From contig NC_043007.1 of assembly GCF_006345805.1 (NCBI RefSeq), forward strand, positions 73,098,001-73,162,000: a stretch of DNA of 64,000 bases. Direction: 5' to 3'. Shown piece after piece: positions 3,146-64,000 of this stretch (the first letter of the stretch is position 1; the number at the start of each line of letters is the position of its first letter). The stretch comes from Octopus sinensis. Lineage: Eukaryota. Both the position numbers and the translations under genes were made by a program. The notes beneath the pieces are model-generated. The model saw only the letters and a list, made by a program, of their open reading frames with translations. It had not been told where the DNA came from and ran no database searches.

Positions 3146-3399
3146 TCTTTCATGTTATATAAGTATTTAAAATTATATTTGGAAGAAACAGCATACTTCT
3201 CACACTAGACTAAAGCTCTTTAACAAGGAAACTATTCAAGGCCTTTGTATCTTATATATTCAACAAGCTAGCTATTGTCAGCTAAGGTGAAAAATAGGCG
3301 GGAAGGACAGTAGAGAGAGAGAAAGCTGGCTGTATGGTGGGGTGGAGAGCCAAGCATAGTGCATGATGAAAAGCAGTTTGGTTTTATATAGGGTGGGGA

Positions 3400-4290
3400 A
3401 TTAAAGCAATGTGTATGTGTGTGGAAAGCGCATAATACACAGTGCTTCCAGAACTCAGTTTCACTGAGATGGGCAGGTCTTTTAGCTAGATTCTTCTTCT
3501 GCAACTGTCTTATTAAGATGATGGCATCCACAGTACTCCTTTTTTGTACAAAACCAAACTGCATTTCATCTAGTCTAATTCTGTTCCTAATCAACTGAGC
3601 TATAACTTTCTCTCCCTCAGTAATTTTCATGATCTGGTCCAGCAGTTTGATACCTCTGTAATAGTTTCTATCTAAGGTATAGCATTTGACTAAAATACTG
3701 CTACACCAGTCATTGGGTGCATCACTTTCCTGTATCACCCGATTGACTATATTGGTGACAAGTCCATATCCTACTCCACCAGATATTTTAAGCATCTCAG
3801 TGGTGATTCCTGATGGTCCAGGGGCTTTCCTTGTCTTCATATCCTTAATTGCCTCAATTATCATACTGGTGTTAACTCTGGTGGCTAGTCCCTCAGTTGG
3901 GTCAATAGTAGGAAAATTCTCTTCCCATGCATTCTCCACATTTAGCAATCTTTCATAGCGGAACTTCCATGCATCTTTCTTCTCTGAATCACTAAGTGCA
4001 AGCATACCATTATCCAATCACATACATTCGTCACCCACAGTATTTTCTCTCTGATACACTGCAATCCAGAACACATCATACCGCTGACCCTCACACTGTA
4101 AAACATTAAAAAATCTCCTATTTTCTGCTTCACCCTTCACTATGTTAACTTGTTGCCTAGTTTCCCTTCTCAGCTGATAGATATTCTCTGCGATCACCAT
4201 TTTCCCAGTCTTTCTTGGCCTGTCTCTTTGCTTTTATAGCACTGTCTACCTCCTTGTTTTTTAGCCTGGCCAGAACTTTGCACCAGGCTT
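3400..4290 (-). pseudogene. RTE LINE ORF fragment (linker and RT N-terminal motifs)
   Basis: KAPGPSGIT.EMLK, YRGIKLL, QFGFVQKRST.DAI in ORF 3268-4017; stops and frameshifts. Confidence 0.85.
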
Positions 4291-19739: not shown

Positions 19740-20480
19740 TGTCACCGGCAACAATTTTAACTGGACAATCAGTACAAAAGAGACCAAAGTTGTGCATCAG
19801 CCAGTTCCAGGATGCACTGAACCCAACATCTTCATCAACAGACAACACCTGAATGCAGTAGACAAGATCACTTACCCAGGAAGTAAAGACTCCTGAACTG
19901 TCATCATTGATGAAGAGAACCCCAGACTCAGCAAGAATGTGTGAAACAAGAGAGGTATCAATCCTAAGAGTGTACTGAACCATGATTCTCACCAACAGCT
20001 CAATGGTTGCAAAGACAATCTTCCAATGACTTGAAGTTAAAATACATCCATGCCACAGGCCTCAAAAAAGGAGGATAGTATTCTTGACATAGATGTACTC
20101 TCTCATTCTTGATTACCCAGCATTCACAAAATCCTGAAACAATCACAGCTGCATTGAGCAGGTAACATAGTCCTTATGTCATGTCAGCTAAAAAACTGTT
20201 CAAGGGTAATCTCTAGAATGATAAATGCTCCCAAGGAGTCCAGAAAAGATACTACTAAGACACACTGAAAGCCTCACTGAAGGCCTTCAACATCAACATA
20301 TAAAGAATGGGAGCAAACAGTACTGGATAGAAGTGAATGGTGTGCAACAGTCAGTAAACGCTTTGAGACTTGTAAGGCTAATTAAAGAACTATTGCCAAG
20401 CAACACAGACAGGCCACAAAGAAAAACCCCATTAGTCTGTGCATTCACAAGTCTGTATCCCTTGGTTGCAGAAGTGTCTC
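19740..20480 (+). pseudogene. Degenerate RTE (BovB-like) RT C-terminus
   Basis: ISTKETKVVHQP...NAVDKITYPGS and KRYY*DTLKASLK...DRSEW motifs across frameshifts. Confidence 0.65.
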
Positions 20481-20779
20481 ATTGGTGAGATTAAAAGTGA
20501 TATCTTGCAAGATAAATCCTGTTTTGCTCAGGTTTTAATACAGCATGTTGCTAGTGACCATAGGTTTTGGCCCTTAAGCAGGAATTGCAAATGGCAGATT
20601 TCATTGCAAGGTTAGAAACAGTTGTCTACATATATTTAATACCTGATGAGACTCTTCTGCACCAACTGATGCACCACAACCAGTTGTGCAGTATCTCATC
20701 CATGTGGGTCACTGTGAGATTAGTTGAAACAATTGTTATGAGCAATAAAGTTTCTTGTATATTTCATTTTCCATCGCTA

Positions 20780-21027
20780 TCATTTGTTGTACATAAAAAA
20801 AGCACCAACCGATCGTGGCCAATGCCAGACCCCTCTGGCACCTGTGCAGGTGGCACGTAAAAAGCACCCACTACACTCGCGGAGTGGTTGGCGTTAGGAA
20901 GGGCATCCAGCTGTAGAAACACTGCCAGATCAGACTGGAGCCTAGGGCAGCCCCTGGCTCCCCAGACCCCGGTCGAACCGTCCAACCCGTGCTAGCGCGG
21001 AAAACGGACGTTAAACGATGATGATGA
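20780..21027 (+). mobile_element. RTE 3' UTR copy, young
   Basis: Intact CpGs, GGCGTTAGGAAGGGCATCCAGCTGTAG, (GAT)n tail. Confidence 0.85.
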
Positions 21028-23890
21028 TATATAGTCAATCCAAACATGAACGAGCAAGAAAAAAACAACAACGTGGAATAAGTACAGTGTTATTCGACAC
21101 TCAGTAAAGGAGAGAAAAGAAAGAAGATTTCACGTTTCGAGCAGCGCTCTTCATTAGAAATATAGAAAAAGTCCAAAGAAGGGAAGACGGAGAAAGAAAA
21201 TCGCCAACGATACACACGTGGTCACATATTGAAATGATTGGAAGGGAATGGGTGAAAAAAAGTTCTAAGATAGGAAAGTGCAAGAGAAAGAAGTATGTGT
21301 AGGTATGTGTGTGCATGCAGGTCTGTATGTGTGTGTGTGTGTGTAATGATAACACGTGTGTGTGCGTGTGTGTGTGGCTGTTTATGTATGTGTGTGGTTG
21401 GACTTAGTGTCACTTAAGGTCATAGGAAGAATTTATAGTAAGAATTTTGGTAGGAGTGGCTGTCTGTTGTGTGTCGCCCTACATATGTGCATAGGAGAAT
21501 AGACAGTAGTAAGGTGTTTAACTGGTAGTTTGAAGTATGTGTGTGCGTGTATGTATATGTAGTGTGTATGTGTTTTGTTTGCAGTGTGTGTATGTGCGTG
21601 AAGTTGTGTGTGGGGTTGTGTCTGTGAAGTAAATGTACGTTACTCTGTGTGTGTGTGTACTTGTATGTGCGTGTGTGTGTATCTATGTTTGTATAATTGT
21701 GTGCGTGTATGTATGAGTGTGCTTTGTGTGTATGGGAGGTATGTGTAGGTTGATTTGCGTGTACATGTGTGAATGTGTGTGCATGTGTATATATGTGTGT
21801 GCGTGTGAGTGTATGTGTGTGTGTATGAACGTGCATGTGTGTATGCGGGTGTGCATATGTGTATGCATGGAGTTATGAGTGTTAGATGTGTGTGCATTCA
21901 TGTGTTTGTGTGCGCATTATGTGTGCGTGTGTGTATGTGCATCTATGTGTATGCATATGTGTGTGTATGTATATGTATGTGTGTATGTGAGTTTGTGTAT
22001 GCATGTGTGCATGTATGTGCATGTGTTTATACTCATGTGTGTGTAATTGTGTGTGGGTCTGTTTGAGTGTGTGTTGTGTGTTGAAGGTATGTGTGCATAC
22101 ATGTGCGAGTGTATGTATGTGTGTATATGTGTGCATGTGTATGTGCGTGTGTGTGTTCAAACGTAGCCAAACATCCCTTAGATATTTGGTGAACCAGTCG
22201 GCCAGTTGGCAGCCCATCTGACCTACATATAGTTTACCACAGAGGTTGCATCTAATACAGTATATGAGGCTAGAAGAGGTGCAAGGGAAGGAATTTGGTG
22301 ATGCAAAGAGTGTGGTGATTGGAACCAGGAAGAGAAGCAGTGTTGGTTATGAAGGGGCAGGTCTGACAGTGGGATCTGGAGCACAGGAAGGATCCAGGTG
22401 AGGCTGGGGAGGGAAGAGGAGAAGGTGCTATGGACCAGAAGATTGCATAGGTTCTGGGTGCGTTTAAAGGACAAGAGCGAGCTGGAGACGACAGAAGGCT
22501 CGTAGGATCCTCTGACGAAGAGGTAGGGTGGAAAAGGAGGTGCGATCAGGGGGTTGGTGTGGAGAAGGAGAGAGGGTGGTGGTACAATCAATTCGATGAG
22601 TGCAGGCAAAGATGGTTTGGACAAGGGTTGAGGGGTATCCTCAATGCATGAACAGATGGGCAAGGTAGTGGGACTGGGTCTCAAAATCCTGGTCCTGGCT
22701 GCACAAGCATCGGAGGCAGAGGAACTGGAAGTAGGGAATGGCTCATTTGGTGTGGAAGGGATGGGAGGAGGAGAAGCTGAGGTAGTGGTGGGAATCTGTG
22801 GGTTTGAAGAAGGCAGAGGTGGTGAGAGAGTGGGAGGGGTAGTCAATGGTAAGAGAGATATCAAGGAAGTTAACCAAGGTGTTAGAGATAGTAGAAGTGA
22901 ATTGGAGAGAAGGGTGGAAGTTAGAGAGGAAAGAGATGAAGAAGCAGAGTTGTTGTTGGGTGAAGAGTGGGGGCCAGAGGGAGGAGAGGAGGTAAGCTTG
23001 GGGAAGTAGGTGGTCAAGAGAGTGAAGGAGGGGGCAGGTGGAATGGATGGTGGCACGGATGAGGAGGCGGGAAGTGCAGGTGAGGGTGGGCTCAATGATG
23101 GGGAGGAATAGGGGTTGCATGGAACTTGAAGAGGAAGCCATGGGGTGTGATGTGATGGCGGAGGCAACGGCTAAGAAAAGAGAGATGACTAGAGTGGCGA
23201 GTTTTTCTAAAAAGCAAGTGAGAGAGTTTCTTTGCAAGCATGGGGGGGGGGTGCACGAAAATGGAAAAGAAGAGATTCAAGGTCCTGGAGAAAGGAGTGG
23301 TAGTCAGGCATGGTGAGAGGATGTGAATGTCGGTGTAGGTGTTATTGGTGGTGACAAAAAGAGAAAAGTGGAAGTAGAACAGGAGATAGGTAGAAGGAGG
23401 ATGAGATAAAGTGGAAGAGTCACAGACAAACTGTAATGATTTCCAATCAAGATTAGAGTGGCATAATCTGAATGAATAGGAACAGTAATCCGGAGGTACA
23501 AGAATTCCAGGAATTAGTTACTCCAAAGTGAATCAGAAGGCTTGGGTCCGTGTGAGCATGCGGTATATAGTCAATCTAAACAGGAACAAGCAAGAAAAAA
23601 CAACAATGCGAGGACGTGGAATAAGTACTGTGTTATTGGACGCTCAGGAAAGGAAAGAAAAGAAAGAAGATTTCATGTTTCGAGTGGAGCTCTTCATCAG
23701 AAATATAGAAAAAGTTCAAAGAAGGGAAGACAGAGAAAGAAAATCTCCAACAATACACACAAGGTCACATATTGAAATGACCGGAAGGGAATGGATGAAG
23801 AAAAAGTTCTTTCTAAGACAGGAGAGTGCAAGAGAAGGAGGTATGTGTGTGTATGTGTGTAATGATAGCACAATTATGTGTGTGTGTGTG
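21028..23890 (-). mobile_element. Penelope-like element (Neptune-type) bounded by two direct terminal repeats
   Basis: Direct repeats at about 21028-21360 and 23564-23890. RT C-terminus VNFLDISL...FKPTDSHHYLSFSSSHPFHTK, Cys-rich linker and GIY-YIG remnant at 22160-23237. Confidence 0.85.
21300..22160. repeat. Cryptic (TG/CA)-rich low-complexity tract
   Basis: About 860 bp of degenerate TG dinucleotide repeat; source of the many His/Thr and Val/Cys ORFs. Confidence 0.9.
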
Positions 23891-24542
23891 TATTATTTTT
23901 CTGATTTCACTGGACTATGGCCATGTTAGGGCATCACTTCCAAAGCTTCAGTAAATTATATCGATTCCAGTACTGATTTCCGTCTGGTAGTTATTTTATC
24001 AATTTCTCTTTGGTGAACTGCTGGGGTAAAAGACACAAATACACATACATACATGTACACACACATACATACATGTACACACACATGCACACACATACAC
24101 TATACACATAGATTTCCATACAGTCTCCTTTGGTCGACTCAAGCACAAAGTGCATAGCAATGATACTTTGGGAAAGTGTCTGGTCTAAAGTTCCCTTTTT
24201 TAATCTTTAGCACACGTAAAGCACATTATGTTGCCATAGAATTTTCTCCCTTGTAGTTGCAGGCACATTGTGTCACACTGAGAGGGGAGAATACTCATAC
24301 AATGACATAATGCTGCTCCAATGTGCTAAAGGTTAAAATGCAGATGAGAGAAATAGAGATAATCATCTGCATCGGAAAGATTCTGGAACATAAATCACTA
24401 AATCTCACTACACACTACACGTTTTCAGTATTTACCATTAAATAAATAACAAAACCAGTGGATAGATAGACATCAGTCAACAATCAAGTAAAACCTACGT
24501 ATTATTAGTGTTATTTTTGTGGTCACAATATAAGAGCAGGTG

Positions 24543-32575: not shown

Positions 32576-34542
32576 TTAAAGTATAGAGTTGAATTTCTTG
32601 TAGCCACCTGTTGGCAACTTTTCTCAACTCACATTCTTGTTGTCATAACCAACAGAGTACCTGTATAAAAGATAATTTCACTATGAACATTTGAAGTTAA
32701 TAGCAATTAATGGAAAGTATTCATAGCAGATGAGGGGGAAAAAAAAATCCAAATAGGGTCAATTTCAGATGCTTGTCTTTTCTTATGAGACGCTGCAACA
32801 AGGCCAACACAAGTGTTATTTCACATAAGACAGTCATCCAACCTTTGATAGAACAAGAGAACAAATGTTCATATATTGATGATAGTAAGGGGGTGAATCA
32901 GCAGATTCATTAACACGCAGGACAAAATGCTTAGAAGCATTTCATCCAGCTTAACGTTCTCAATTCAAAAGTTGCCAAGCTCAACTTGCCTTTCATCTTT
33001 CCGCTGTCGATAAAATAAGTACCAATTGAGTACTGGTGTCGATGTAACTTGACTTATCCCTAACCCCCACATCGCTGGCCAACCAATATATTGATGATAG
33101 TAAGGCAGTGAGCTTTCAGAATTATTACCGCACTGGACAAAACGTTTAGCAGCATTTTGTCCACCTTTACATTCTGAATTCAAATTCTGCCGAGATCTAC
33201 TTTGCCTTTCATCGTTTCAGGGTCGATGAAATAAGTACTAGTGGAGTACTGAGGTCAATATAATCAATTGTATCCTTCTCCCCAAAACTGTTGGCCTTCT
33301 GCCAAAATTTGAAACCAATATATTAATGATAGTCATAATTAAATTAGTAATTAAGGACAATAAGTCAATATATCTAAAATCTAGGTTTAAGATACACTAA
33401 ATATCTTTTACCTGTTTCAATAATTGGACAGCAACCTGGCTGTACTCGAACAAATCGAGACTAATATGTATTTTTTTGTTTGTTTTTTAATGTCTGGTAC
33501 TTATTTTATCGGTCACTTTTGATGAAGTGCTAAGTTACGAGAAAATAAACAAACCGACGTCGGTTTGTGGGAGACACACACATGCACGACGAGATTCCTC
33601 AGTTTCCGTCTGCGAAATTCACTCACAACACATTGATCACCCCAGGGTTATAGGAGACGCTTGCCTACGGTGCAGTCCATTGAGTGGGAGAGAAAGTGTG
33701 TGTGAGAGAGAGTACCACTTACACATACATGCAAAAAATACATCCATGACAACACACCTTCACCCTCTCTTTCTGCCACTTACGTCCATTTCATATACAC
33801 GTACATACATTTTTCACTTTCTCAAAGAGTAAAGAAATAAAATATTTCACGGAAATTAACGAACAACATCATATGTGATTGATAAGTTTGCTGCTAGTAA
33901 CGAAGGAATACCATAAATAATACTAAACGAAATAACTCAAATAATTGCTTAACGCGGTAATGAAACTAAGACAAAATAGAACGGAAGAAGCCTCATACAG
34001 GTCTTTCTAATATTTAGAAATAGCAGCCAATTTCTCTCCAATTATACTTTCCAGTTTCAACGTAGACAAAACTTAAGGATCACCGTCCTTATACACTTAA
34101 AAAGCCGTTATGGTCATAGCAGAAATACATTTACTCATCGGTTGACTCGATCAGGGTTAGTTTGAGGCTAAACAACATCAAAAATAAGAGAAACATTATA
34201 TTTATATATAAACCGGTAAGATAAACGAAGCGAATTAACCGAATAAAGTTAATGATTTCATATTAGATATCATCGGAATTTATCCCATTACGTGTCACTA
34301 ATTTCTAATAAGAACATAAAATCTTGCCGTGCACACTTCAATAACATCCCTGGTGTTTATTTATCTCGTAAAGCAATGTTTTCTTTTTTTCCCAGGCAGC
34401 ATATAAATTGAGTAGGGGGACGTAACTAAACATCACAACATGTTAACCGACACTTAACTATTTCTTCGTGACTGAATACGAAGCATGCTGCTTATAAACA
34501 AAATTCTGTTAAAAATTACACGAATTAAACATTCAAGGATAC

Positions 34543-34672
34543 AAATCGCAATATTTTTGTCTTCATTATTCTTGAGATCATCAGCGGAAGATCCTGAATC
34601 TTTAGCCTGTCCCAGTAAAATCATGTTTAGTAAAAGATACACATTATAAAATATCCAGTTGTGTACCACCAT
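34543..34672 (-). CDS. CCDC134: CCDC134 coding exon 1 (signal peptide; MVVHNWIFYNVYLLLNMILLGQAKDSGSSADDLKNNEDKNIAI + 1 nt)
   Basis: ATG at 34672, hydrophobic signal-peptide-like N-terminus, donor T|GTATCC at 34542. Phase 1 joins exon 2 to form Tyr. An in-frame ATG at 34699 is an alternative start. Confidence 0.85.
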
Positions 34673-34686
34673 TGTCACTGTTTTCA

Positions 34687-34694
34687 CCGGAAGT
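34687..34694. promoter_or_regulatory. ETS-family motif CCGGAAGT at the probable CCDC134 TSS
   Basis: Exact CCGGAAGT 15 nt upstream of the ATG in a CpG-retaining segment. ETS sites are typical of housekeeping core promoters. Confidence 0.5.
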
Positions 34695-35167
34695 GGCATG
34701 GACTTCTATGAAACGTGTGCTTTTAAGAATCTCTCTCTCCCTTTATCTTTCTACCTATCTATCTGCCACATTCTTCCGGCTTTTCGTTCTGAGTTCAATC
34801 TTCACCGAGGTTACAGTTTCCTGTAATCCTTTCAGGTTTGATAAAATAAGTACCAATCAAGTTCTGGAGTCGAGACGGATCGACTAGCTCCTCCCCTAAA
34901 TTTCAAGCATGTGCTTATAGTAGAGTGGATTTTGAAAAAGGCTGCGAGCTAGCAGAATCGTTACTACGTCTAATAAAAATGCTTAGAGACATTTCGTTCG
35001 TCTTTGCCTTCCATCCTTTCGAATTTGATAAAATAAGAACCAGTCGAGCACTGGGGTGGATGTATTCGAGTTACTCCCTCCCCCGAAATAGCTGGCCTTG
35101 TGCCAAAATTTGAAACCATTATTATTATTTCGAGGCCACCAAGAATGGATTTAAAAAAAAAAACTTC

Positions 35168-47725: not shown

Positions 47726-47923
47726 ATGTGCCTGAAAGTCTGTCTGCTGTGTTCCACTGGTTGGTTTTCATTGCTTCCACTATCCTGTTTACCACTTTTG
47801 CTACTTTATGGTCTCGCATGTGGTGCGGATACCATCCTTCGAATGTCACTCCTTTTGTCATTGGTCTGTGTCCTGGGGCATTATATTTCAATTAATTGGA
47901 TTTTTCTTCAACCATTTGGAGAG
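47726..47923 (+). CDS. Exon 1 of an uncharacterised multi-pass membrane protein, Ice2/SERINC-like (66 aa, MCLKVCLLCS...YGLACG...FLQPFGE)
   Basis: ATG with A at -3, two hydrophobic stretches, GAG|GTATGT donor at 47924, phase 0, matching the acceptor at 52535. Confidence 0.8.
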
Positions 47924-48899
47924 GTATGTATTCGATGTTGCCCCGTCCTTACAATCCAGTTCTTAAATTATCACTATCAAATTTAAGAATTTCAAAATTC
48001 CCCGCCAAGTTTATAAACAACACTAACATTTCATAAAATTGTTCTTTCGTTATTATTGAATACTTTCGTTCTTCAAAGCGTAATTAAAATATTGCCGGTT
48101 TCTTTATTAGTTGCAGGTGTGTGATGGAAAAAAAATTAAAAACAATCTTTACCGGAAAGATTAAGTTACGAATGAATGAGTGATTATTTTCGGAGATAAA
48201 TCTCAAGTAGTCGAGTTGGATACCAATAAGAAATTTATAAAAATATTGTCGCTGTAATTGATTATTTTAAAATTTAATATCTGACATTAAATATTCTTTA
48301 ACTTAACTTTAACAGTAATCATTAGTGATTTAAAAATAAGTAACCAGCATGCGAAAGTATTCAGTAATGAAAGTACAATATATGATGAGAATGTGGTGTG
48401 CGATCGTCGCAAAAAAGCTAATTAACTAATAAATAAATTATTTTAGCCAAAGACCACAGTTTAAAAAAAAAATACCGCAGCTCCATTCATGTTTACACAA
48501 AGAAAGGGGATTTTTTTTTCATGTTTTCGATAAAAAGGAATTTGCTGACAAATTTTGGACAATAGAATAATTAGCAGATATCTAGATATTGAAGGATACA
48601 AAACATTTACTCGAAAAACATATTCAAGTATTATTCCCATGCATGGTTGTGTAATTAAGTTCGGTTCCACTGCGTAATAATTCGGAGAAGCTTCTTCTTC
48701 AACTATACATCAAGACTAATATCATGAGTGGAATTTGGTAGATGGAAACTGTGTGAAAACCTATTTTATATATATGTATATGAATAATTGTTTAGTTTAT
48801 GACATGAAATAAACGCACACAACTCTTGACTATCTCTTTCTTTCTCTATTTTAGTTGCCGGTGCTGAAACCGAATCTTTTGCATCCCTCAACTCTGTAT

Positions 48900-49330
48900 C
48901 AATTAGATTCATGCCCTACACATTCTGCTGGCCGACACACATATTCTTCGTATCTTTTTCACTTCCAAACCCAGTCTCCACCAAACCATCAGTCTCTGCA
49001 TCCATCAGGTCGTGTCTTACTACGTCTGTCCACTACACATTTAAGTACTTCGTCACTCCCTCACTCTTGCATCCCATGCCACCTCAAGTCAGTTGACGGA
49101 TTGGCTCTATGTAAATATATACTTGCAGCATATTTTCTTCATCTCTGATCCATCAGAACTGACACACGAGTGAAATCATTTCCCGTAGTCATGTCACTCA
49201 AGATTTCATGCATGAACAATTCTCACCCCAAATCTCATGAGTAGTTCACTCGTAGATTCCACACAACATTTCAAGCAAAAAGCACAGCTTGTATCACTTG
49301 GAGAAAATTACTCCCTCCTGCAAACAAGTT
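48900..49330 (-). pseudogene. Degenerate RTE C-terminal fragment in the intron of the membrane-protein gene
   Basis: EMLCG...WTDVVRHDL remnants. Confidence 0.45.
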
Positions 49331-49369
49331 GGCTTTTACCCAGTACATCAATCCTTTGGAAGACCAACA

Positions 49370-49770
49370 AATTCGATGACTGGCACCTGGTTGTTGCCTG
49401 TGCTGCTGGACTGACTCCTGTGCAGGTGGCAAGTAAAGAAACACCGTTTCGACCCAGTGCTTCAGGAGACCTATTGAGTCAAGTACATCAAAAATCAATG
49501 GAAATTGTTGTGATACCTGTGTCGGTGGCACGTAAAAAGCACCATCCAAACGTGGCCGATGCCAGCGCCACCTCGACCGACTTCTGTGCCGGTGGCACGT
49601 AAAAAGCACCAACCGATTGTGGCCATTGCCAGCCTCGCCTGGCACGTAAAACGCACCCACTACACTCACCGAGTGGTTGGCGTTAGGAAGGGCATCCAGC
49701 TGTAGAAACACTGCCACATTAGAGCCTGGTGCATGGAAAACGGACGTTAAACGATGATGATGATGATCTC
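49370..49770 (+). mobile_element. RTE 3' UTR copy with three internal GGCACGTAAAA modules
   Basis: Direct reading; (GAT)n tail at about 49752-49768. Confidence 0.8.
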
Positions 49771-50511
49771 CTTGCATTGCACATCCCTCAAGCCTTCCCA
49801 CCACCCAAAGTCAGTCAATCTTTTTAACAAAAGAATCTCTCCAAACTTTGTGGAATCTTCTTTCTTTCTATTTGCCAACCCTGGAGGCTCTGTAAGCAGG
49901 ACTCTCATGGAGATAACTTTAACAAGTCAAACCAAACCTGCACTGTCTCCATGAAGAGTGAGACCTCGAAAGCATCTTCCAAAAAAACCATTTCAATCTT
50001 GTCTCCTTCAAAAGCTCAAAATCTCAATCATTATATGTAACGTTGTAAACTTCCCATTAAACAAGAATCAGTGAATTGATATGAAATCCTTCACTAACAT
50101 GCTCAATCCTTTCAGACATAAGTCTACTGTCAACTCATCCTACCTCATCCTACTTTTCCTATGATAGTCACATTGGCCTCTGGTTTCTGCATCTAGCTAG
50201 TTTTATGCTACCTTCTCTCAGGCATTCCTAAATCATTAGTTATCCTCTTGTCACCCGTATAATACATCTTTCATATAGACACCTTGACAGTGAATACTAT
50301 GTCCACTCCTTCTTTGTGCATGTTTCCTTGTAGCTGTCAATTTGCACCTATTTAAAGAGGAACATTAATTGCATTGTTCTGATAGGTCTCAGAGGGTCAG
50401 CAAAGGCCATGGGTACAGTTTTGCTTCAGATCAAACCAAGTAAATAAAAAAAATTAATATACCCCTGGTTAAATTACTTTGCTTTTATTGACCAGAGACA
50501 GAGTTAGTTGG

Positions 50512-50680
50512 CATAGGCATAGTTGTGTGGTTAAGAAGTTTACCTCCCAACCATGTGGTTTGGGGTTCAATCCCATTGCATGACACCTTGGGCAACTGTG
50601 TTCTGCTATAGCCCTTGACTGAATAAAGCGTTGAGTGGATTTGGAAGACTGAAAGAAGTTTGTTGTGTGTGTGTATTTCT

Positions 50681-50730
<50 letters not shown>

Positions 50731-50935
50731 CACACACACATATATACACACACACACACATACATATATATTTGTATATGGTGTGTATATGAGGGGGGGG
50801 GTCTGCATCTTCTTGTTTTGTCATGCAATAGTTGTGAGTGGCTCCAAGGAGAAATTTTTACCTTACTTAGACAGAAGTGAGGTTTGGTGACAGGAAGAGT
50901 TTCAACTATAGAAAATCTGCTTCGAGTTTCTGTTA
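50512..50935 (+). mobile_element. CORE-SINE head joined to an RTE-like tail (alternative-tail subfamily)
   Basis: Family A head and CORE block, microsatellite, then GGTGACAGGAAG..ACTATAGAAAATCTGC. Related tails at 59620-59830 and 25515-25680 (-). Confidence 0.6.
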
Positions 50936-50959
50936 ATCACATTAACTTCAGCTTACTTT

Positions 50960-51560
50960 CTAGTCAGTGAGACCATAACCTTCTCGGCAAGCGCAAGTGA
51001 GACCATAACCTTGTGGCCTATACCAGGGGTGTAACCAGTCCACTTATGCGTGCCTTTCCTTCATTGGACACTAAACTCCGCTTGCGAAGACCTGTTGAGG
51101 CAAGTGAAATTGAAATCGAAATGAAACTCGGTGACTGGCATCTGTTGCTAGTGGAGCACTAAGAGTACCATACGAGTGAGATCGTTGCCAGAGCAACAAG
51201 CTGGCCCTTGTGCCGATGGCATGTTAAACACACAATTTGAGCGTGATCGTTACCTGCGTCGCCTTACTAGCACTTGTGCTGGAGGCACATGAAAAAACAT
51301 TCGAGCAAAGTCGTTGCCAGTGCCGCTGGACTGGCTCCTTTGCAGGTGGCACATAAAAAGCACCATTTGAGCATGGCCCTCGTGCCGGTGGCAAGTAAAA
51401 TCACCCACTACACTTTCTGAGTTGTTGGCGTTAGGAAGGGCATCCAGCTGTGGAAACTCTGCCAGATCAGATTGGAGTCTGGTTCGCCAGACCTCAGTCA
51501 AATTGTCCAACCCATGCTAGCATGGAAAACGGACGTTAAACGATGATGATGATGATGATG
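50960..51560 (+). mobile_element. Complete RTE 3' UTR (from ORF stop to (GAT)n tail)
   Basis: Starts GCAAGTGAGACCATAACCTTGTGGCC, as found directly after the RTE stop at 55551, and ends GGACGTTAAACGATGATGAT. Confidence 0.85.
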
Positions 51561-52535
51561 AATAAATACAATAAACATTTTCATTACTAAGTTGGCATTT
51601 GGAAGATAAATCAACAACAAATTCTTACAGTAAATTATAATGGAATGTTTTAATTTAGACATGCTTTAAAACAAACAGCATTGTATGATAGAATAAGAGA
51701 TAGAATGATAGCAAAATGATGAATCACTGAATACATTTAAACTTGTTTTGTTCTAAAGAATGTTCTTTATTGTCCAGACTTGCCCAAGAATACTTTTCAT
51801 TTATTTCTTTTTGTATTGTGGCTTGCAAGATTCTTGATGTGAACCCATGTGTTGAGATATATTTTGTTGTATCTCAAGAGGGTCATTATGCCAATAATAA
51901 ACACATGCACTGGTTGGATGTATAGTAAGAAGTTTGATTCCGAGCTGCATGGTTCTGGGTTCAATCCTACCTTGGGCAAGTGACTTCTACTGTAGCCTTG
52001 GGTCAATCAAAACTTTATGAGTGTATTTGGTTGACATAAACTGAAAGAGGCCCATTGTATGTGTGTGTGTGTGTATGTTTTGCCTCCAGCATCACTTCTT
52101 CAAGGTGGTGGGCCAGTATGGTCACAGTCCAATGACTGAAACGAGTAAAAGATAAAAGATAATTACCATTTAACTAATTAACTAATTGATTGCTTGATTA
52201 TTAATCATCAATCATTTAGGTTTTGTCAAAGTCCTTTTATTGCCATTTGCAAACCTCATCCATAACATTCTCTCATTACTCCAAGTCAAATTCTCATATC
52301 GAACCTCAAACAGATGTAACATGTTTTTTGAATTAACTCAAATATATATGAGTATATTTTGTGGCTTTACTTTGTGATGAAAGTAAACTGTAACTTGGGT
52401 TCATGAACTACCTTATAACTACTAAAATAATATAGAAAGTAAATCTTAGCTATGTTAATTAAGATATAGTTATTTATTGTTGTAAGATACCTGTTTTCCA
52501 GTTATTTATATATTTATTGTTGTTTTCTTATTTAG

Positions 52536-53471
52536 GTTGGATTATTTATTCTGCTGTGGGCTCTCCCTGTGAAACTCATCCCTTATTCAGTGGTATATGT
52601 CTATGGCTTTGTGCTGCAGTTATTTGAACCTATCATGTTATTCCAAGAAGTTCTCTTTATTCTTCTCCTAGCAACAAAACTTTCCAATTACATAAATGAT
52701 TTGGCTGAAGAGGATGATGAGGATAACCTGTACATATATCAAATTATATTTGCTATATTTTCTATTCTAAACTATGGTTTATCCTGTTATATTGTGTTAA
52801 TAACTTTTAACAGCAACACCTGGCTTCTTTATGTGATATTGTTTCTAACAGTCTTCAACCATGTTCTCATGTGGTCATTAGGAACTGGACAGATGTGGGA
52901 AACTGCTTTTAGCTTCATGTTGACCATGCTTATACTTTTACTCATGAAAACAGAGAACAACTTAAATGAAAATATAGAATTACCTATTTTATCCTGTTTT
53001 GATTCTAAACACACTTTGATAGAATTTGTGAGCAGTGTTTGGCAACTAAACTCTGAGAAACTATCCAACTTTCTAAATTTGATTGGCAGATTTTTAAGTC
53101 CTATTTTTCTTGGCACTATTTTCCTACGGCTCTTTTCTGTCAATTGCTTCAATTATCAGAAAACTGTTTCAATGTTTTTTGAAAACGAAGACAAAGAAGA
53201 TGATGATTTATTAGAAGAAAGTAGTCTGTCCATTTTAAGTTGCTCAGGTTTACAACCAACTCTTGTTTGTAAATTGGGCACAGTTTTTGTTGTTACGCAA
53301 CTTATGATTAGACAATTTTATCTTTTTATCGGAAATGGCTTAATTGCTCAGCAAGAATGGATAAAAAATTGGTTGCCTGATAATATATTAATTGGAAGAG
53401 TAACTCAAATGTTTTTGGTGAATATTTTCTTTCAGCATTCAATTTACAGACGATGGTCAGATAATTCTTAA
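52536..53471 (+). CDS. Exon 2 of the same membrane protein (311 aa + stop; VGLFILLWALPVKLIPY...RRWSDNS); spliced product 377 aa with about 10 TM segments
   Basis: 936-nt open frame after acceptor TTGTTTTCTTATTTAG|G, phase 0. The GTG at 52569 in the ORF track is an internal Val. No repeat character. Confidence 0.9.
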   Translation, partial: VGLFILLWALPVKLIPYSVVYVYGFVLQLFEPIMLFQEVLFILLLATKLSNYINDLAEEDDEDNLYIYQIIFAIFSILNYGLSCYIVLITFNSNTWLLYVILFLTVFNHVLMWSLGTGQMWETAFSFMLTMLILLLMKTENNLNENIELPILSCFDSKHTLIEFVSSVWQLNSEKLSNFLNLIGRFLSPIFLGTIFLRLFSVNCFNYQKTVSMFFENEDKEDDDLLEESSLSILSCSGLQPTLVCKLGTVFVVTQLMIRQFYLFIGNGLIAQQEWIKNWLPDNILIGRVTQMFLVNIFFQHSIYRRWSDNS

Positions 53472-55248: not shown

Positions 55249-55875
55249 ATGATTACTGGCTTCTCGACAGAGTGTAAGTACCTTGAGAGAAAAGTTGGAC
55301 CTAAGAAGCATCAGATGTGGTGTGCAAGACTGCGCTGGTATGATCATGTGGCGAGAATGGATGAGGATAGCTGTGTGAAAAAGTGCCACACCCTTGCAGT
55401 TGAGGGAACCTGTGGAATAGGTAGACCCAGAAAGACCTGGAATGAAGTGGTGAAGCACGAACTTCGAACATTAGGCCTCACCGAAGCAATGACTAGTAAC
55501 CGAGACTTTTGGAAATATGCTGTGCTTGAGAAGACCCAGCAAGCCAAGTGAGACCATAACCTTGTGGCCTATGTCAGGGGTGTAACTAGCCCACTTATGC
55601 ATACCTTTCCTTCATTAGACACTAAACTCTGCTTGTGAAGACCTGTTGAGGCAAGTGAAATTGAAATCAAAATAAAATTCGATGACTGGCATCCGTGCTA
55701 GTGGAGCGCTAAGAGCACCATCCAAGCATGATCATTGCCAGAGCAACTAACTGGCTTCCATGCTGGTGGCACATAAAAAGCACCATTTGAGCGTGATCAT
55801 TACCAGCGTTGCCTTACTGGCATGTGAAAAAAACTTTTGAGCGAGGTTGTTGCCAGTGCCACTAGACTGGCTCTT
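55249..55875 (+). mobile_element. RTE LINE ORF end plus 5' part of its 3' UTR
   Basis: CARLRWYDHVARMDEDSCVKKC...GRPRKTWNEVVKHELR...EKTQQAK*. Confidence 0.9.
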
Positions 55876-55879
55876 TCCA

Positions 55880-57110
55880 TCAGCATTCACCCGGGGTGGG
55901 TTTAGCTGGCTTCATTCATCCTCAATACTGCATCTCACAAACGCCGACCAGACCTGGCGATTTGAGGCTAACGATCTCCAACCACTCCTTATTCCAGTGG
56001 CAAATGCCGTAGGTATGGGGGCCTAGGTTGGGTTCCAGATCAGCCTTGACTGTCATCAGCCAGGTTTTTCATTGTCCACCACATTGCTTTCGCCAACCCT
56101 GAAGGGGAACCGGGGCAATTGCTTCGTAGATGAATTCTGCTTGACGACGGAGGGCATGACCCAGCCAACGCAGACGTCTTGTTAGGATGACTTGTCGGAG
56201 GGAAGTGATTTTGCACTGGTGTCGCACCAAATTGTTGGAGACAAAATGATGCCATTCGACATGAAGGATGCGGTGTAGACAGGTGATTGAAGGATTCTAG
56301 TCGCTTAATATCTTCCACCCTCATTGGCTATGACTCACTGTCGTAAAGGAGAATCATTCACACTAGCGCTTGGTAGATCCGTACTTTGGTGGTGCGTCAG
56401 ATCTCAGATCTTGACCAGAGTCATGCATTGAATCGGTTGGAGGCTTGGCGAGCGAGGTCGATTCGTGTTTTAATGTCAGCCTCACCTTGACCTGTAGCTG
56501 TAATGATGGCACCGAGGTATTTGAAACTCTCAACCTCTTCAAGAATATCACCATTGAGGACAATGGGTGTTTTGTCTGGTAGGGCGAAGCCAGCTGTGAG
56601 GGTTTTGGTCTTCGAGGCATTGACTTTCATACCAATCTGCGATGCAACATGCCGGAGCTCAATGATAACAAACTGGACATCAGCAAATGTTTCGCCAAGT
56701 ATCGCAATGTCATCTGTGTAATCTAGATCCTTGATGGAAAAGTTGTGACCAACAGTGACACTGGGGAACTCCCTTAATGCATTTGTGGTGATCCAGTCGA
56801 TGGCGTAATTGAAAAGAGTTGGCAAAAGAACATATCCTTGCCGAACGCCAGACTATATTTTGAAGGGTTCCGACACTTCACTGTACATGTGTATGCGGGA
56901 TCTTGTTGAGCAGTTAATAAGCTTTGGTAAGATTGAGAAGTTTAGGTGGGATACCATCTGCCTGCATGATCTACCAGAGGGTGTCACAATCGACGGAGTC
57001 AAATGCAGCAGCAAAATCAACAAAGCAGATGACTGTCTTCCTGTCTTTGCCCGTGTCCGGTTTCATTTTGCCAGCTGGCTATTTCTGAATTTGATGTAGC
57101 CATGGAGCAA
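55880..57110 (-). pseudogene. Second RTE-clade RT fragment (different family)
   Basis: SGVRQG..L.PTLFNYAIDWI, DLDYTDDIAILG, GMKVNASKTK, VESFKYLG. Confidence 0.85.
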
Positions 57111-61837: not shown

Positions 61838-63545
61838 TAGGAAGGCGGCAAGCTGGCAGAAACATTAGCACGCCGGGCGAAATGCATAGCCGTATTTTGT
61901 CTGCCGTTACGTTCTGAGTTCAAATTCCGCCGAGGTCGACTTTGCTGTTCATCCTTTCGGGGTCAAAAAATTAAGTACCAGTTAAGCACTGGGGTCGATG
62001 TAATCGACTTAATCCGTTTCTCTGTCCTTGTTTGTCCTCTCTGTGTTTAGCCCCTTGTAGGTAGTAAAGAAATAGGTATTTCGTCTGCCATTACGTTCTG
62101 AGTTCAAATTCTACCGAGGTCAACTTTGCCTTTCATCCTTTCGGGGTCGATTAAATAAGTACCAGTTACGCACTGGGGTCGATGTAATCGACTTAATCCG
62201 TTTGTCTGTCCTTGTTTGTCCTCTCTATGTTTAGCCCCTTGTGGGTAGTAAAGAAATAGGTATTTCGTCTGATGCTACGTTCTGAGTTCAAATTCCGCAA
62301 CGGTCGACTTTGCCTTTCATCCTTTCGGAGTCAATTAAATAAGTACCAGTTACGCACTGGGGTCGATGTAATCGACTTAATCCGTTTGTCTGTCCTTGTT
62401 TGTCCCCTCTGTGTTTAGCCCCTTGTAGGTAGTAAAGAAATAGGTATTTCGTCTGTCATTACGTTCTGAGTTCAAATTCTACCGAGGTCGACTTTGCCTT
62501 TCATCCTTTCGGGGTCGATTAAATAAGTACCAGTTACGCACTGGGGTCGATATAATCGACTTAATCCGTTTCTCTGTCCTTGTTTGTCCTCTCTGTGTTT
62601 AGCCCCTTGTGGGTAGTAAAGAAATAGGTATTTCGTCTGCCATACGTTCTGAGTTCAAATTCTACGAGGTCGACTTTGCCTTTCATCGTTTCGGAGTCGA
62701 TTAAATAAGTACCAGTTACGCACTGGGGTCGATGTAATCGACTTAATCCGTTTGTCTGTCCTTGTTTGTCCTCTCTATGTTTAGCCCCTTGTGGGTAGTA
62801 AAGAAATAGGTATTTCGTCTGATGCTACGTTCTGAGTTCAAATTCTACCGAGGTCGACTTTGCCTTTCATCCTTTCGGGGTCGATTAAATAAGTACCAGT
62901 TACGCACTGGGGTCGATATAATCGACTTAATCCGTTTCTCTGTCCTTGTTTGTCCTCTCTGTGTTTAGCCCCTTGTGGGTAGTAAAGAAATAGGTATTTC
63001 GTCTGCCATTACGTTCTGAGTTCAAATTCTACCGAGGTCGACTTTGCCTTTCATCCTTTCGGGGTCGATTAAATAAGTACCAGTTACGCACTGGGGTCGA
63101 TATAATTGACTTAATCCGTTTCTCTGTCCTTGTTTGTCCTCTCTGTGTTTAGCCCCTTGTAGGTAGTAAAGAAATAGGTATTTCGTCTGATGCTACGTTC
63201 TGAGTTCAAATTCCGCAACGGTCGACTTTGCCTTTCATCCTTTCGGAGTCAATTAAATAAGTACCAGTTACGCACTGGAGTCGATGTAATCGACTTAATC
63301 CGTTTGTCTGTCCTTGTTTGTCCTCTCTGTGTTTAGCCCCTTGTGGGTAGTAAAGAAATAGGTATTTCGTCTGACGCTACATTCTGAGTTCAAATTCCGC
63401 CGAGGTCGACTTTGCCTTTCATCCTTTCGGAGTCGATTAAATAAGTACCAGTTACGCACAGGAGTCGATGTAATCGACTTAATCCGTTTGTCTGTCCTTG
63501 TTTGTCCTCTCTGTGTTTAGCCCCTTGGGGGTAGTAAAGAAATAG
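61838..63545 (+). repeat. SINE-derived tandem array: one head plus nine ~184-bp units
   Basis: Unit starts at 61892, 62076, 62260, 62444, 62628, 62810, 62994, 63178 and 63362; junction AAAGAAATAG|GTATTTCGTCTG. Confidence 0.95.
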
Positions 63546-64000
63546 GAAGGCGGTGAGCTGACAGAATCATTAGCAAGCTGGACAAAATGCTTTACACCAT
63601 TTCTTCCAGTTTTACATTCTGAGTTGAAATTCCATTCCACATCCTACTGAGGTTGACTTTGCTTTTCATCCTGTTGGAGTCAATAAAATAAGTACCAGTT
63701 GAGTATTGAGGTTGATGTAATCGACTAGCCCTCCCTCCAAATTTCAGGCCCATGTGGCTATACTAGAAAAGATTAGGAAGAGTATTCAACCATAGAAACC
63801 ATGCCAAAGAAGACAGTGGCGCTCAACACAGCCCTCCACTTTGTTGGGTCCTCTTAAACCATTGAACCCATACCAGCATGAAAAATGGATGATAAATGAT
63901 GGCGACGATGACGATGATGGACATAATAGGCTGAAAGATAGATGTTTGTGTAGTGGTGTACGTGTAAATGGAGAAGTAGGTCACATGGTAGTGTCTGTCC

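What the first reader, a model, noticed from the sequence alone, without database searches (positions are those of the whole stretch)
47726..53471. Candidate animal homologue of fungal Ice2 (SERINC superfamily): hidden two-exon, ~10-TM protein
Seen: a phase-0 GT-AG splice joins 47726-47923 to 52536-53471, giving a clean 377-aa frame with about ten hydrophobic segments, short loops and an acidic loop (ENEDKEDDDLLEESS). Compared with my recollection of fungal Ice2 proteins, motifs appear in the same order. These are G-x-x-C-G after TM1 (YGLACG vs VGGRxCG), P and E in TM4 (LFEPIMLFQEV vs FxTPxFTLLEG), G-x-G-x3-E-[ST]-x3-F before TM7 (LGTGQMWETAFSF vs GRGNPVESSLLF), L[ST]P...R in TM8 (LSPIFLGTIFLR) and V-x-T-x-L in TM9 (VVTQLMIRQF vs VYTxLLxQHF). 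TM4-TM5 also echo SERINC (LNYGLSCYIVL vs LNYLLSLVAIVL). Established: Ice2 is regarded as a fungal ER protein that restrains Nem1-Spo7/Pah1 (lipin) to drive ER expansion, and it is a distant SERINC homologue. Inference: this may belong to an uncharacterised metazoan Ice2-like branch lacking the long fungal loop, possibly an unrecognised ER-lipid regulator or scramblase in molluscs.
Basis: partly seen in the sequence, partly recalled or inferred. Interest (0 to 1): 0.85.

Follow-up and report, generated by a model that had tools for sequence, protein, structure and literature searches.

The report
Octopus Ice2-like SERINC-superfamily membrane protein

Summary
Exons 47726-47923 and 52536-53471 join through a phase-0 GT-AG intron into a 377-aa frame. 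That frame is 100% identical to RefSeq XP_029643170.1 (Octopus sinensis LOC115217570, "uncharacterized protein"). The same intron position is kept in Argonauta, and dN/dS against Argonauta is about 0.10.

A profile of the cephalopod proteins finds only 31 relatives among 1.84 billion representatives. Four of these carry accessions that Alli-Balogun & Levine (2021) list for their "intermediate ICE2-like family": Mizuhopecten XP_021373130.1, Acanthaster XP_022104596.1, Capitella ELT98757.1 and Stylophora XP_022780854.1. The octopus entry in that list, XP_029642825.1, is a 30%-identical paralogue of this gene. The two arose from a cephalopod-specific, fast-evolving duplication.

My own tests of the deeper link agree but are individually weak:
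- AlphaFold model (pLDDT 83.6): SERINC3 and Drosophila SERINC are the only meaningful PDB fold matches (TM 0.35-0.47).
- Family consensus: top Pfam hit is Serinc (E=0.0011, below threshold).
- hhalign: E=0.002 to SERINC and E=0.03 to Ice2.
- The alignments place the family's invariant Glu104 on Ice2 E158 and SERINC Q181.

Function is untested. Most likely it is an endomembrane lipid-handling protein. Verdict: a new member (second cephalopod paralogue) of a published but uncharacterised family. Interest is modest.

The parts
47726..47923 (+). Coding exon 1 (residues 1-66: Met-Cys start, TM1, the G29/G33 loop, TM2, start of TM3)
   Evidence: It ends at a GAG|gtatgt donor. The translation is identical to XP_029643170.1. 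Argonauta has an exon of the same 198 nt.
47924..52535 (+). Phase-0 GT-AG intron (4.6 kb) holding repeats and microsatellites
   Evidence: Donor is gtatgt; acceptor is a polypyrimidine run followed by tttag. Argonauta has an intron at the same position and phase, there only 1.2 kb long. In O. bimaculoides exon 2 has the same acceptor.
52536..53471 (+). Coding exon 2 (residues 67-377 plus the TAA stop): TM3-TM10
   Evidence: tblastn with the scallop and paralogue proteins hits only this place in the window. dN/dS against Argonauta over the whole CDS is 0.10.
52629..52649 (+). TM4 core P98-x5-E104. Glu104 is invariant in the 23-sequence family alignment
   Evidence: One search shows the invariant column. 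hhalign places P98 on Ice2 P152, M100 on Ice2 F154 and DmSERINC F177, and E104 on Ice2 E158 and DmSERINC Q181. The 2021 paper names these same cleft residues.
52887..52913 (+). Start of TM7: G184-Q-M-W-E188-T-A-F-S. This is the cephalopod version of the family motif EGIISDAAF
   Evidence: G184 is at least 90% conserved. It aligns with Ice2 G243...E247-S-S and with SERINC S-G-L-L-Q-S-S.
53097..53129 (+). TM8 motif S254-P255-x8-R264 (R264 nearly invariant)
   Evidence: It is in register with Ice2 (S/T)P-x8-R386 in the full-length hhalign. The C-terminal segment test gives E=0.017, better than all controls.
53181..53225 (+). Acidic loop ENEDKEDDDLLEESS (residues 282-296) between TM8 and TM9, predicted disordered
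   Evidence: The AlphaFold pLDDT is below 50 at residues 294-305, and the 10-residue block means are 61, 46 and 59 over residues 281-310. An acidic ED-rich loop occurs at this place across the family.
53289..53303 (+). TM9 motif V-V-T320-Q321-L322 (family consensus IFVYTQL)
   Evidence: it aligns in register with Ice2 A-V-Y-T431-H432-L433.

Best explanation
Window 47726-53471 (+) is the two-coding-exon gene LOC115217570 of Octopus (sinensis/vulgaris). It encodes a 377-aa, ten-transmembrane-helix protein with a SERINC-type fold. The protein is one of two cephalopod-specific paralogues of the small invertebrate/amoebozoan 'intermediate ICE2-like' family, which Alli-Balogun & Levine (2021) placed on the Ice2 side of the SERINC superfamily.

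Shown here: the gene model, purifying selection, family membership, ten helices with two long helices (TM4 and TM8), and SERINC as the only structural neighbour.

Inferred: like its relatives, it sits in an endomembrane, most likely the ER. It probably handles or senses membrane lipid through a polar cleft lined by the invariant TM4 glutamate (E104, equivalent to Ice2 E158 and SERINC Q181). It could do this either as an ATP-independent lipid scrambler or carrier like SERINCs, or as a lipid-metabolism regulator like Ice2. It has no catalytic motif and no Pfam domain.
For: Gene model and constraint:
- The model is identical to RefSeq.
- The intron position is conserved and dN/dS against Argonauta is 0.10.

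Family membership:
- The cephalopod profile finds only 31 proteins in 1.84e9, nearly all matching full length at 330-395 aa.
- Hits include the accessions printed in the paper's Supplementary Table 4, group 2: Mizuhopecten XP_021373130.1 (E 4.8e-39), Acanthaster XP_022104596.1 (2.4e-16), Capitella ELT98757.1 (3.4e-12), the Stylophora LOC111322078 cluster (2.9e-11) and the cluster of O. sinensis XP_029642825.1 (3.9e-25).
- BLASTP to that paralogue gives 2e-44 at 30% identity.
- In the tree, cephalopods form a clade (100/100) inside molluscs (100/99).

Fold:
- The AlphaFold2 model has pLDDT 83.6 and pTM 0.82, with ten TM helices including long H97-125 and H255-284.
- In Foldseek against 350,542 PDB chains, ranks 1-2 are human SERINC3 7ru6_A (E 0.032, prob 1.00, TM 0.41/0.47) and Drosophila SERINC 6sp2_A (E 0.13, prob 0.92). 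Every other hit has prob of 0.09 or less and TM of 0.18 or less.

Sequence links to SERINC and Ice2:
- The family HMM consensus has Pfam Serinc as its top hit: E 0.0011, residues 85-235 against profile positions 137-300. Mya member P0027 also hits Serinc, at E 0.026.
- hhalign family vs SERINC: E 0.0015-0.0021, score 32-33, 165 columns. Family vs Ice2: E 0.025-0.029, score 25, 117 columns covering TM4-TM7. Reversed-profile controls score 13.
- The two alignments are transitive with the published Ice2-SERINC residue pairs.
- A relaxed full-length alignment to Ice2 is co-linear over all ten helices.
Against: - The octopus protein has no Pfam hit at all and no sequence hit in the PDB.
- Every direct link to SERINC or Ice2 is below conventional significance on its own: Serinc 18.4 bits against a cut-off of 24, hhalign probabilities 2-17%, TM-scores below 0.5.
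- With my thin profiles (30 Saccharomycotina Ice2 sequences, 2 SERINCs), Ice2 and SERINC do not find each other. The superfamily link therefore rests partly on the published deeper searches.
- The cephalopod clade sits on a long branch of 1.32 substitutions per site and has lost the family's EGIISD motif.
- dN/dS between the two Octopus species in exon 2 is 0.58, on only 29 differences.
- There is no localisation, expression or biochemical evidence for any animal member.
Confidence: 0.8

Rival explanations
1. It is the functional metazoan counterpart of Ice2 specifically. It would be an ER protein that binds and restrains the CTDNEP1-NEP1R1 (Nem1-Spo7) phosphatase complex, so keeping lipin phosphorylated and favouring membrane phospholipid synthesis over fat storage.
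For: - The published tree puts the intermediate family on a common branch with Ice2.
- The full-length co-linear alignment to Ice2 shares P-x5-E (TM4), G-x3-E-[ST] (TM7), SP-x8-R (TM8) and VYT[QH]L (TM9).
- Nem1, Spo7 and lipin are conserved in animals, whereas Ice2 is not.
Against: - The sequence signal to Ice2 is the weakest of all (E 0.03) and there is no Pfam ICE2 hit.
- The family is absent from the vertebrate and most model-organism lists in the paper, although CTDNEP1-NEP1R1 works there.
- The Ice2 regions that contact Nem1-Spo7 are not mapped here.
- No experiment exists on any animal member.
Confidence: 0.15
2. It is simply a very divergent SERINC proper (a serine-incorporator/TMS1 orthologue) that acts as a plasma-membrane or secretory-pathway lipid scramblase.
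For: - SERINC3 and DmSERINC are the only fold neighbours.
- Pfam Serinc is the top hit of the family consensus.
- hhalign to SERINC is ten times better than to Ice2.
- The family G-x-[DE]-x-V-L-R-x-S aligns with the SERINC G-Y-x-A-V-Y-R motif.
Against: - It fails the Pfam Serinc gathering score, and the octopus protein itself gives no hit at E up to 10.
- It is about 90-130 residues shorter than SERINCs (377 against 468-513 aa).
- The cysteine-rich N-terminus of SERINCs is missing.
- The profile search retrieved no SERINC among 1.84e9 representatives.
- The paper resolves the family as a separate cluster from 171 SERINCs.
Confidence: 0.07
3. The resemblance to Ice2 and SERINC is convergent or compositional. 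On this view the family is an unrelated, lineage-restricted polytopic membrane protein.
For: All direct statistics are sub-threshold. Hydrophobic helices inflate profile scores. N-terminal segments show no signal.
Against: - Reversed-profile controls score about 13 against 25-33 for the real alignments.
- Segment tests peak only on the co-linear diagonal.
- Alignments made independently to Ice2 and to SERINC land on the same published residue equivalences.
- Foldseek shows a step from prob 0.92-1.00 for the two SERINCs to 0.09 or less for everything else.
- PSI-BLAST and HMMER iterations linking the three families are published.
Confidence: 0.06
4. It is a decaying or non-functional duplicate (a pseudogene in the making) of the other octopus paralogue LOC115217313.
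For: It sits on a long branch and has lost the EGIISD motif. dN/dS between O. sinensis and O. bimaculoides in exon 2 is 0.58.
Against: - The 377-codon frame is intact, with conserved start, stop and splice sites in Octopus sinensis, O. bimaculoides and Argonauta. O. vulgaris has an intact 377-aa protein model that differs by 1 residue.
- A 44%-identical orthologue is assembled on over 100 short contigs from public sequencing runs.
- dN/dS against Argonauta is 0.10.
- The invariant E104 and E206 and the near-invariant G33, S41, P63, P77, P82, G184 and R264 are all retained.
Confidence: 0.03

Closest known systems
'Intermediate ICE2-like family' of Alli-Balogun & Levine 2021 (about 42 proteins without Pfam domain, mostly invertebrates plus some amoebae)
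   Same: It is mutually detectable with listed members at E 1e-11 to 1e-39. Length (about 370-395 aa), ten TM helices, the acidic TM8-TM9 loop and the invariant TM4 Glu all match. The sister paralogue XP_029642825.1 is itself on the published list.
   Different: This paralogue (XP_029643170.1) is not on the list. The cephalopod clade is fast-evolving: the EGIISDAAF motif has become TGQMWETAF and LWLSEP has become LQLFEP.
Fungal Ice2 (Pfam PF08426), an ER membrane protein that inhibits Nem1-Spo7 and so Pah1/lipin
   Same: Both have ten TM helices. A co-linear profile alignment shares P-x5-E in TM4 (E104 = E158), G-x3-E-[ST] before TM7, SP-x8-R in TM8 and VYT[QH]L in TM9.
   Different: There is no PF08426 hit and hhalign gives only E 0.03. 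It is about 110 aa shorter than yeast Ice2, without the budding-yeast inserts. It is animal, not fungal. No link to the lipin phosphatase complex has been tested.
SERINC / TMS1 (Pfam PF03348; structures 6SP2, 7RU6, 7RUG), ten-TM lipid-interacting proteins and HIV restriction factors
   Same: SERINCs are the only structural neighbours of the model. They share the long TM4 and TM8, and the alignment over TM2-TM7 includes G-x-x-x-V-x-R (TM2) and the cleft positions F177 and Q181.
   Different: The match is below the Pfam cut-off and TM-scores are 0.35-0.47. The protein is about 90-130 residues shorter and lacks the Cys-rich N-terminus. At the cleft position it has Glu instead of Gln. It forms a separate cluster in the published analysis.

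Membership tests
Intermediate ICE2-like family (Alli-Balogun & Levine 2021) | Members find each other in sequence/profile searches (the paper's criterion) | tested here: met
   The profile of 3 cephalopod proteins hits published members or their clusters at E 4.8e-39 (Mizuhopecten), 3.9e-25 (octopus paralogue cluster), 2.4e-16 (Acanthaster), 3.4e-12 (Capitella) and 2.9e-11 (Stylophora). BLASTP to XP_029642825.1 gives 2e-44.
Intermediate ICE2-like family (Alli-Balogun & Levine 2021) | No known Pfam domain; ten-TM protein of roughly 350-400 aa | tested here: met
   no significant Pfam family in 23 members; ten TM helices, 377 aa.
Intermediate ICE2-like family (Alli-Balogun & Levine 2021) | Iterated searches from the family reach Ice2 first and then SERINC | not testable with these tools
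   Only one whole-library profile search was allowed, so no iteration was possible. The substitutes were the consensus-vs-Pfam scan and hhalign.
SERINC (PF03348) | Score at or above the Pfam gathering threshold (24 bits) | tested here: not met
   The octopus protein gives no hit at E up to 10. The family consensus scores 18.4 bits, E 0.0011.
SERINC (PF03348) | SERINC fold: ten TM helices, with long TM4 and TM8 | tested here: inconclusive
   The model has long H97-125 and H255-284. SERINC3 and DmSERINC are the unique top Foldseek hits, but TM-scores are 0.35-0.47 and E is 0.03-0.13. I could not examine helix packing directly.
SERINC superfamily (SERINC + Ice2 + intermediate family) | Profile-profile homology over TM2-TM7, with conserved cleft residues in register | tested here: inconclusive
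   hhalign gives E 0.0015-0.0021 to SERINC over 165 columns and E 0.025-0.029 to Ice2 over 117 columns; reversed controls give E about 0.6-0.7. E104 aligns with E158 and Q181, and M100 with F154 and F177, which agrees. hhalign probabilities are only 2-17%.
Ice2 (PF08426) | Match to the Pfam ICE2 model | tested here: not met
   No ICE2 hit for the octopus protein, for the other scanned members or for the family consensus. All 120 listed fungal hits to yeast Ice2 carry PF08426.
Ice2 (PF08426) | ER localisation and inhibition of Nem1-Spo7 / promotion of ER membrane biogenesis | not testable with these tools
   This needs experiments. It is known for yeast Ice2 only (PMC8591542).

The most novel reading that the evidence does not exclude
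The invertebrate Ice2-like family, including this fast-evolving cephalopod duplicate, could be the missing animal counterpart of Ice2. In that case it would be a membrane-embedded brake on the CTDNEP1-NEP1R1/lipin switch, or an ER lipid scramblase. The cephalopod-specific duplication, with its remodelled TM7 motif, would then reflect a new lineage-specific role, for example in lipid-rich neural or secretory tissue.
Probability: 0.15. Interest if true: 0.65.

Novelty: new member of a known kind. Interest (0 to 1): 0.3.

Why it matters
The animal Ice2-like family links two proteins of active interest: the yeast ER-size regulator Ice2 and the antiviral, lipid-scrambling SERINCs. No member of the animal family has been studied experimentally. 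This locus adds three things. It is a second octopus paralogue, it shows a cephalopod-specific duplication with accelerated evolution, and it yields a confident structural model. The model and alignments point to testable residues: the invariant E104 and E206, and the near-invariant G33, G184 and R264. The homology itself and the existence of the metazoan branch were published in 2021, so the value here is incremental, not a discovery.

Tried and rejected
1. A direct Pfam scan of the 377-aa protein at E up to 10 found nothing. PDB sequence searches with the protein and with the family profile found nothing relevant.
2. AlphaFold on a 3-sequence alignment gave pLDDT 36.7 and was unusable. It was superseded by the 35-sequence alignment.
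3. The search for homologous proteins with the 23-sequence alignment returned only 4 proteins because of the candidate cap. That search was wasted.
4. Ice2 has no solved structure in the PDB copy.
5. With my thin profiles, Ice2 vs SERINC hhalign does not reproduce the published link (score 18.6 against 22.0 for the reversed control). These profiles therefore lack power, and my family-vs-Ice2/SERINC E-values are conservative.
6. The N-terminal segment (TM1-TM3) shows no signal to the Ice2 N-terminus.
7. I looked for the paralogue and for the O. bimaculoides isoform-X2 alternative first exon in the window by tblastn and found neither.
8. I rejected the pseudogene reading.
9. I rejected 'hidden gene': the same model is in RefSeq and GenBank.

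Full report
1. OBSERVATION

An ATG at 47726 is the first ATG after an in-frame stop. It opens a 66-codon exon that ends GAG|gtatgt at 47923/47924. A polypyrimidine tract and tttag| precede 52536, from which a 312-codon frame runs to TAA at 53469-53471. The join is phase 0 and gives 377 aa.

This is not a chance frame. The window is about 31-39% GC and holds only five ORFs of 150 aa or more in 64 kb. The spliced product is identical at all 377 residues to XP_029643170.1, 'uncharacterized protein LOC115217570' of Octopus sinensis. It differs by one residue (K286N) from a GenBank O. vulgaris model, is 94% identical to O. bimaculoides LOC106873208 and is 73% identical to an Argonauta hians protein. 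The window is therefore octopus DNA, and the gene is annotated rather than hidden.

In Argonauta, exon 1 is also 198 nt and the intron sits at the same codon boundary (E66|V67) with GT-AG ends, but it is only 1.2 kb long. In O. bimaculoides the exon 2 acceptor is the same. Nei-Gojobori dN/dS for the whole CDS against Argonauta is 0.10 (dN 0.16, dS about 1.7, near saturation). Against O. bimaculoides exon 2 it is 0.58, but on only 9 synonymous and 20 non-synonymous differences. A 44%-identical 379-aa orthologue, presumably from another cephalopod, is assembled as an uninterrupted CDS with UTR-like flanks on short contigs from many public sequencing runs. That fits expression, but I could not verify what type of run these were.

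2. ANATOMY

Hydropathy shows nine to ten hydrophobic segments. AlphaFold2 on a 35-sequence family alignment gives a confident model (mean pLDDT 83.6, pTM 0.82). Its ten membrane helices are:
- TM1: about 2-32
- TM2: 34-57
- TM3: 59-75
- TM4: 83-125, long and kinked at 96
- TM5: 128-156
- TM6: 161-181
- TM7: 186-209
- a 45-residue loop with three short helices
- TM8: 255-284, long
- a disordered acidic loop that includes ENEDKEDDDLLEESS (282-296)
- TM9: 309-331
- TM10: 352-376

In a 23-sequence alignment the invariant columns are M1, E104 (TM4) and E206 (end of TM7). G33, S41, P63, P77, P82, G184 and R264 are at least 90% conserved.

3. WHAT FAMILY IT IS

The protein has no Pfam hit at E up to 10 and no sequence hit in the PDB. 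A profile of the three cephalopod sequences, scored against 1.84 billion representative proteins, finds only 31 proteins at E of 0.001 or better. Most of them match over nearly their full length of 330-395 aa.

Looking up their accessions gives:
- Mizuhopecten yessoensis XP_021373130.1 (E 4.8e-39)
- Acanthaster planci XP_022104596.1 (2.4e-16)
- Capitella teleta ELT98757.1 (3.4e-12)
- the Stylophora pistillata LOC111322078 cluster, which holds XP_022780854.1 (2.9e-11)
- other molluscs, brachiopod, annelid, echinoderm, hemichordate, amphioxus and coral proteins, all named 'uncharacterized'

These four accessions are printed in Supplementary Table 4, group 2, of Alli-Balogun & Levine 2021 (bioRxiv 10.1101/2021.01.08.425964, published in Proteins 89:1240). 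They belong to the 'intermediate ICE2-like family' described there. The paper reports about 42 domain-less proteins, mostly from invertebrates plus a few amoebae and one fungus. PSI-BLAST and HMMER profiles of this family reach Ice2 first and then SERINC. In the paper's tree the family shares a branch with Ice2, while its sequences are more SERINC-like than Ice2 is.

The paper's octopus entry, XP_029642825.1 (LOC115217313, 400 aa), is not this gene. It is a paralogue on the same chromosome-scale contig, 30% identical over the full length (BLASTP 2e-44), and it is not in the window.

A maximum-likelihood tree puts the window protein, its Octopus and Argonauta orthologues, the 44% orthologue and the paralogue in one clade (100/100). 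That clade lies inside a mollusc clade (100/99) on a long stem of 1.32 substitutions per site. This indicates a cephalopod-specific duplication with accelerated evolution. Both paralogues have replaced the family motif EGIISDAAF with x-G-Q/S-M/L-W-E-T/N-A/S-F.

4. INDEPENDENT TESTS OF THE ICE2/SERINC LINK

(a) Fold. Foldseek of the model against 350,542 PDB chains ranks human SERINC3 (7ru6_A; E 0.032, prob 1.00, TM 0.41/0.47) and Drosophila SERINC (6sp2_A; E 0.13, prob 0.92, TM 0.35/0.36) first and second. Everything else has prob of 0.09 or less and TM of 0.18 or less. The step is clear, but the absolute scores are modest.

(b) Pfam. Individual members give nothing significant. The family HMM consensus has Serinc PF03348 as its top hit among 24,736 models: E 0.0011 and 18.4 bits against a cut-off of 24, with residues 85-235 matching profile positions 137-300. 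A Mya arenaria member hits Serinc at E 0.026. Nothing hits ICE2 PF08426.

(c) Profile-profile comparison. I retrieved real Ice2 sequences (all PF08426) and aligned 30 of them. I took the SERINC3 and DmSERINC sequences from the PDB search output.
- Family vs Ice2: score 24.7-25.2, E 0.025-0.029, 117 columns (family 86-202 against Ice2 139-260, that is TM4-TM7).
- Family vs SERINC: score 31.9-32.9, E 0.0015-0.0021, 165 columns (TM2-TM7).
- Reversed-profile controls: score 13-14, E 0.6-0.7.
- hhalign probabilities are low (2-17%). My thin Ice2 and SERINC profiles do not detect each other. These tests are therefore underpowered rather than contradictory.

(d) Consistency. The two alignments put family P98 on Ice2 P152, M100 on Ice2 F154 and DmSERINC F177, and E104 on Ice2 E158 and DmSERINC Q181. 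The paper names exactly these residues as cleft-plugging and cleft-lining equivalents between Ice2 and SERINC. A relaxed full-length alignment to Ice2 is co-linear across all ten helices. It places S254-P255-x8-R264 on Ice2 (S/T)P-x8-R386, and V-V-T320-Q-L on A-V-Y-T431-H-L. In segment-wise tests only the co-linear pairs stand out: core-core E 0.0038 and C-C E 0.017. All off-diagonal and reversed pairs are weaker, and N-N shows no signal.

The N-terminal G-x-x-C-G pairing is not demonstrated. The 'LNYGLSCYIVL' echo reduces to a shared Y-x-L-S in TM5.

5. HOW IT MOST LIKELY WORKS

Shown: a conserved, selected, ten-helix membrane protein with a SERINC-type architecture and an invariant buried glutamate in TM4, at the position that lines the hydrophilic cleft of SERINC and the Ice2 model.

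Inferred: it is an endomembrane (probably ER) protein that binds, moves or senses membrane lipid through that cleft. The mechanism could be ATP-independent scrambling or carrying, as reported for SERINCs (literature summarised in PMC11118262). It could instead be regulatory, as for Ice2, which inhibits Nem1-Spo7 and so keeps Pah1/lipin inactive (PMC8591542).

I put about 0.9 on family membership, about 0.8 on true SERINC-superfamily homology and about 0.4 on a lipid-handling function. I put only about 0.15 on the specific Ice2-like control of the lipin phosphatase. No paper in the searchable library other than the 2021 study mentions the Ice2-like family, so there are no functional data.

6. 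COMPARISON AND NOVELTY

The gene is a member of the published intermediate Ice2-like family (membership feature tested and met). It is not a member of Pfam Serinc or Pfam ICE2 (thresholds tested and not met). It plausibly works like one of them.

New here:
- the second cephalopod paralogue
- the duplication and acceleration in cephalopods
- a confident model
- conserved head-to-head synteny with a PF15002-family gene

Not new: the existence of an animal Ice2-like branch of the SERINC superfamily, and the gene model itself. Interest is therefore modest (0.3). The category is 'new member of a known kind'.

7. LIMITS

- I could not iterate whole-database searches or fold Ice2.
- I could not inspect model coordinates or look at RNA-seq reads.
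- The Ice2 profile contains only Saccharomycotina, and the SERINC profile has only two sequences.
- A consensus sequence, as used against Pfam, tends to score higher than a natural sequence.

Noticed in passing
window 34487-34741 (-): This is the first coding exon of the neighbouring, divergently oriented gene. It is 59% identical over 85 aa (E 1e-26) to the ORF at the annotated end of the neighbouring minus-strand gene in Argonauta. That gene's 227-aa product carries Pfam PF15002 (ERK-JNK_inhib) in both Argonauta and O. bimaculoides. The head-to-head synteny with the Ice2-like gene is therefore conserved across octopods. The spacing is about 13 kb here and about 1.7 kb in Argonauta.
   Followed up: partly
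not in the window; O. sinensis LOC115217313 (P0172), same chromosome-scale contig: A second octopus Ice2-like paralogue (400 aa, 30% identical) exists. This is the one listed in the 2021 paper. Both paralogues share derived changes in the TM7 motif.
   Followed up: yes
L002 3002-3073 (O. bimaculoides), about 10 kb upstream of exon 2: O. bimaculoides has an annotated isoform X2 (335 aa) that uses an alternative first exon (MQKFATSS...FVL) in place of exon 1. That isoform would lack TM1 and TM2. tblastn found no counterpart of this exon in the window.
   Followed up: partly
window 61892-63546: A 184-bp satellite is present in 9.0 tandem copies with 93% matches.
   Followed up: no
window 3268-4017 (-), 55249-55551 (+), 56421-56825 (-): Several ORF fragments have reverse-transcriptase-like or retrotransposon-like translations. 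The likely explanation is decayed non-LTR retroelement copies flanking the gene.
   Followed up: no
window 20000-24000: This block is strongly G-over-C skewed (GC skew up to 0.51, GC 46%). It holds an imperfect 18-bp GT-rich repeat at 21759-22030. A 314-aa Pro/Ser-rich ORF on the minus strand (22223-23167) looks like a composition artefact rather than a gene.
   Followed up: no
window 52536-53471 vs L002 13005-13940: Exon 2 differs from O. bimaculoides at 29 sites, 20 non-synonymous and 9 synonymous (dN/dS 0.58). Against Argonauta the value is 0.10. Constraint may have relaxed recently within Octopus, or the difference may be small-number noise.
   Followed up: partly
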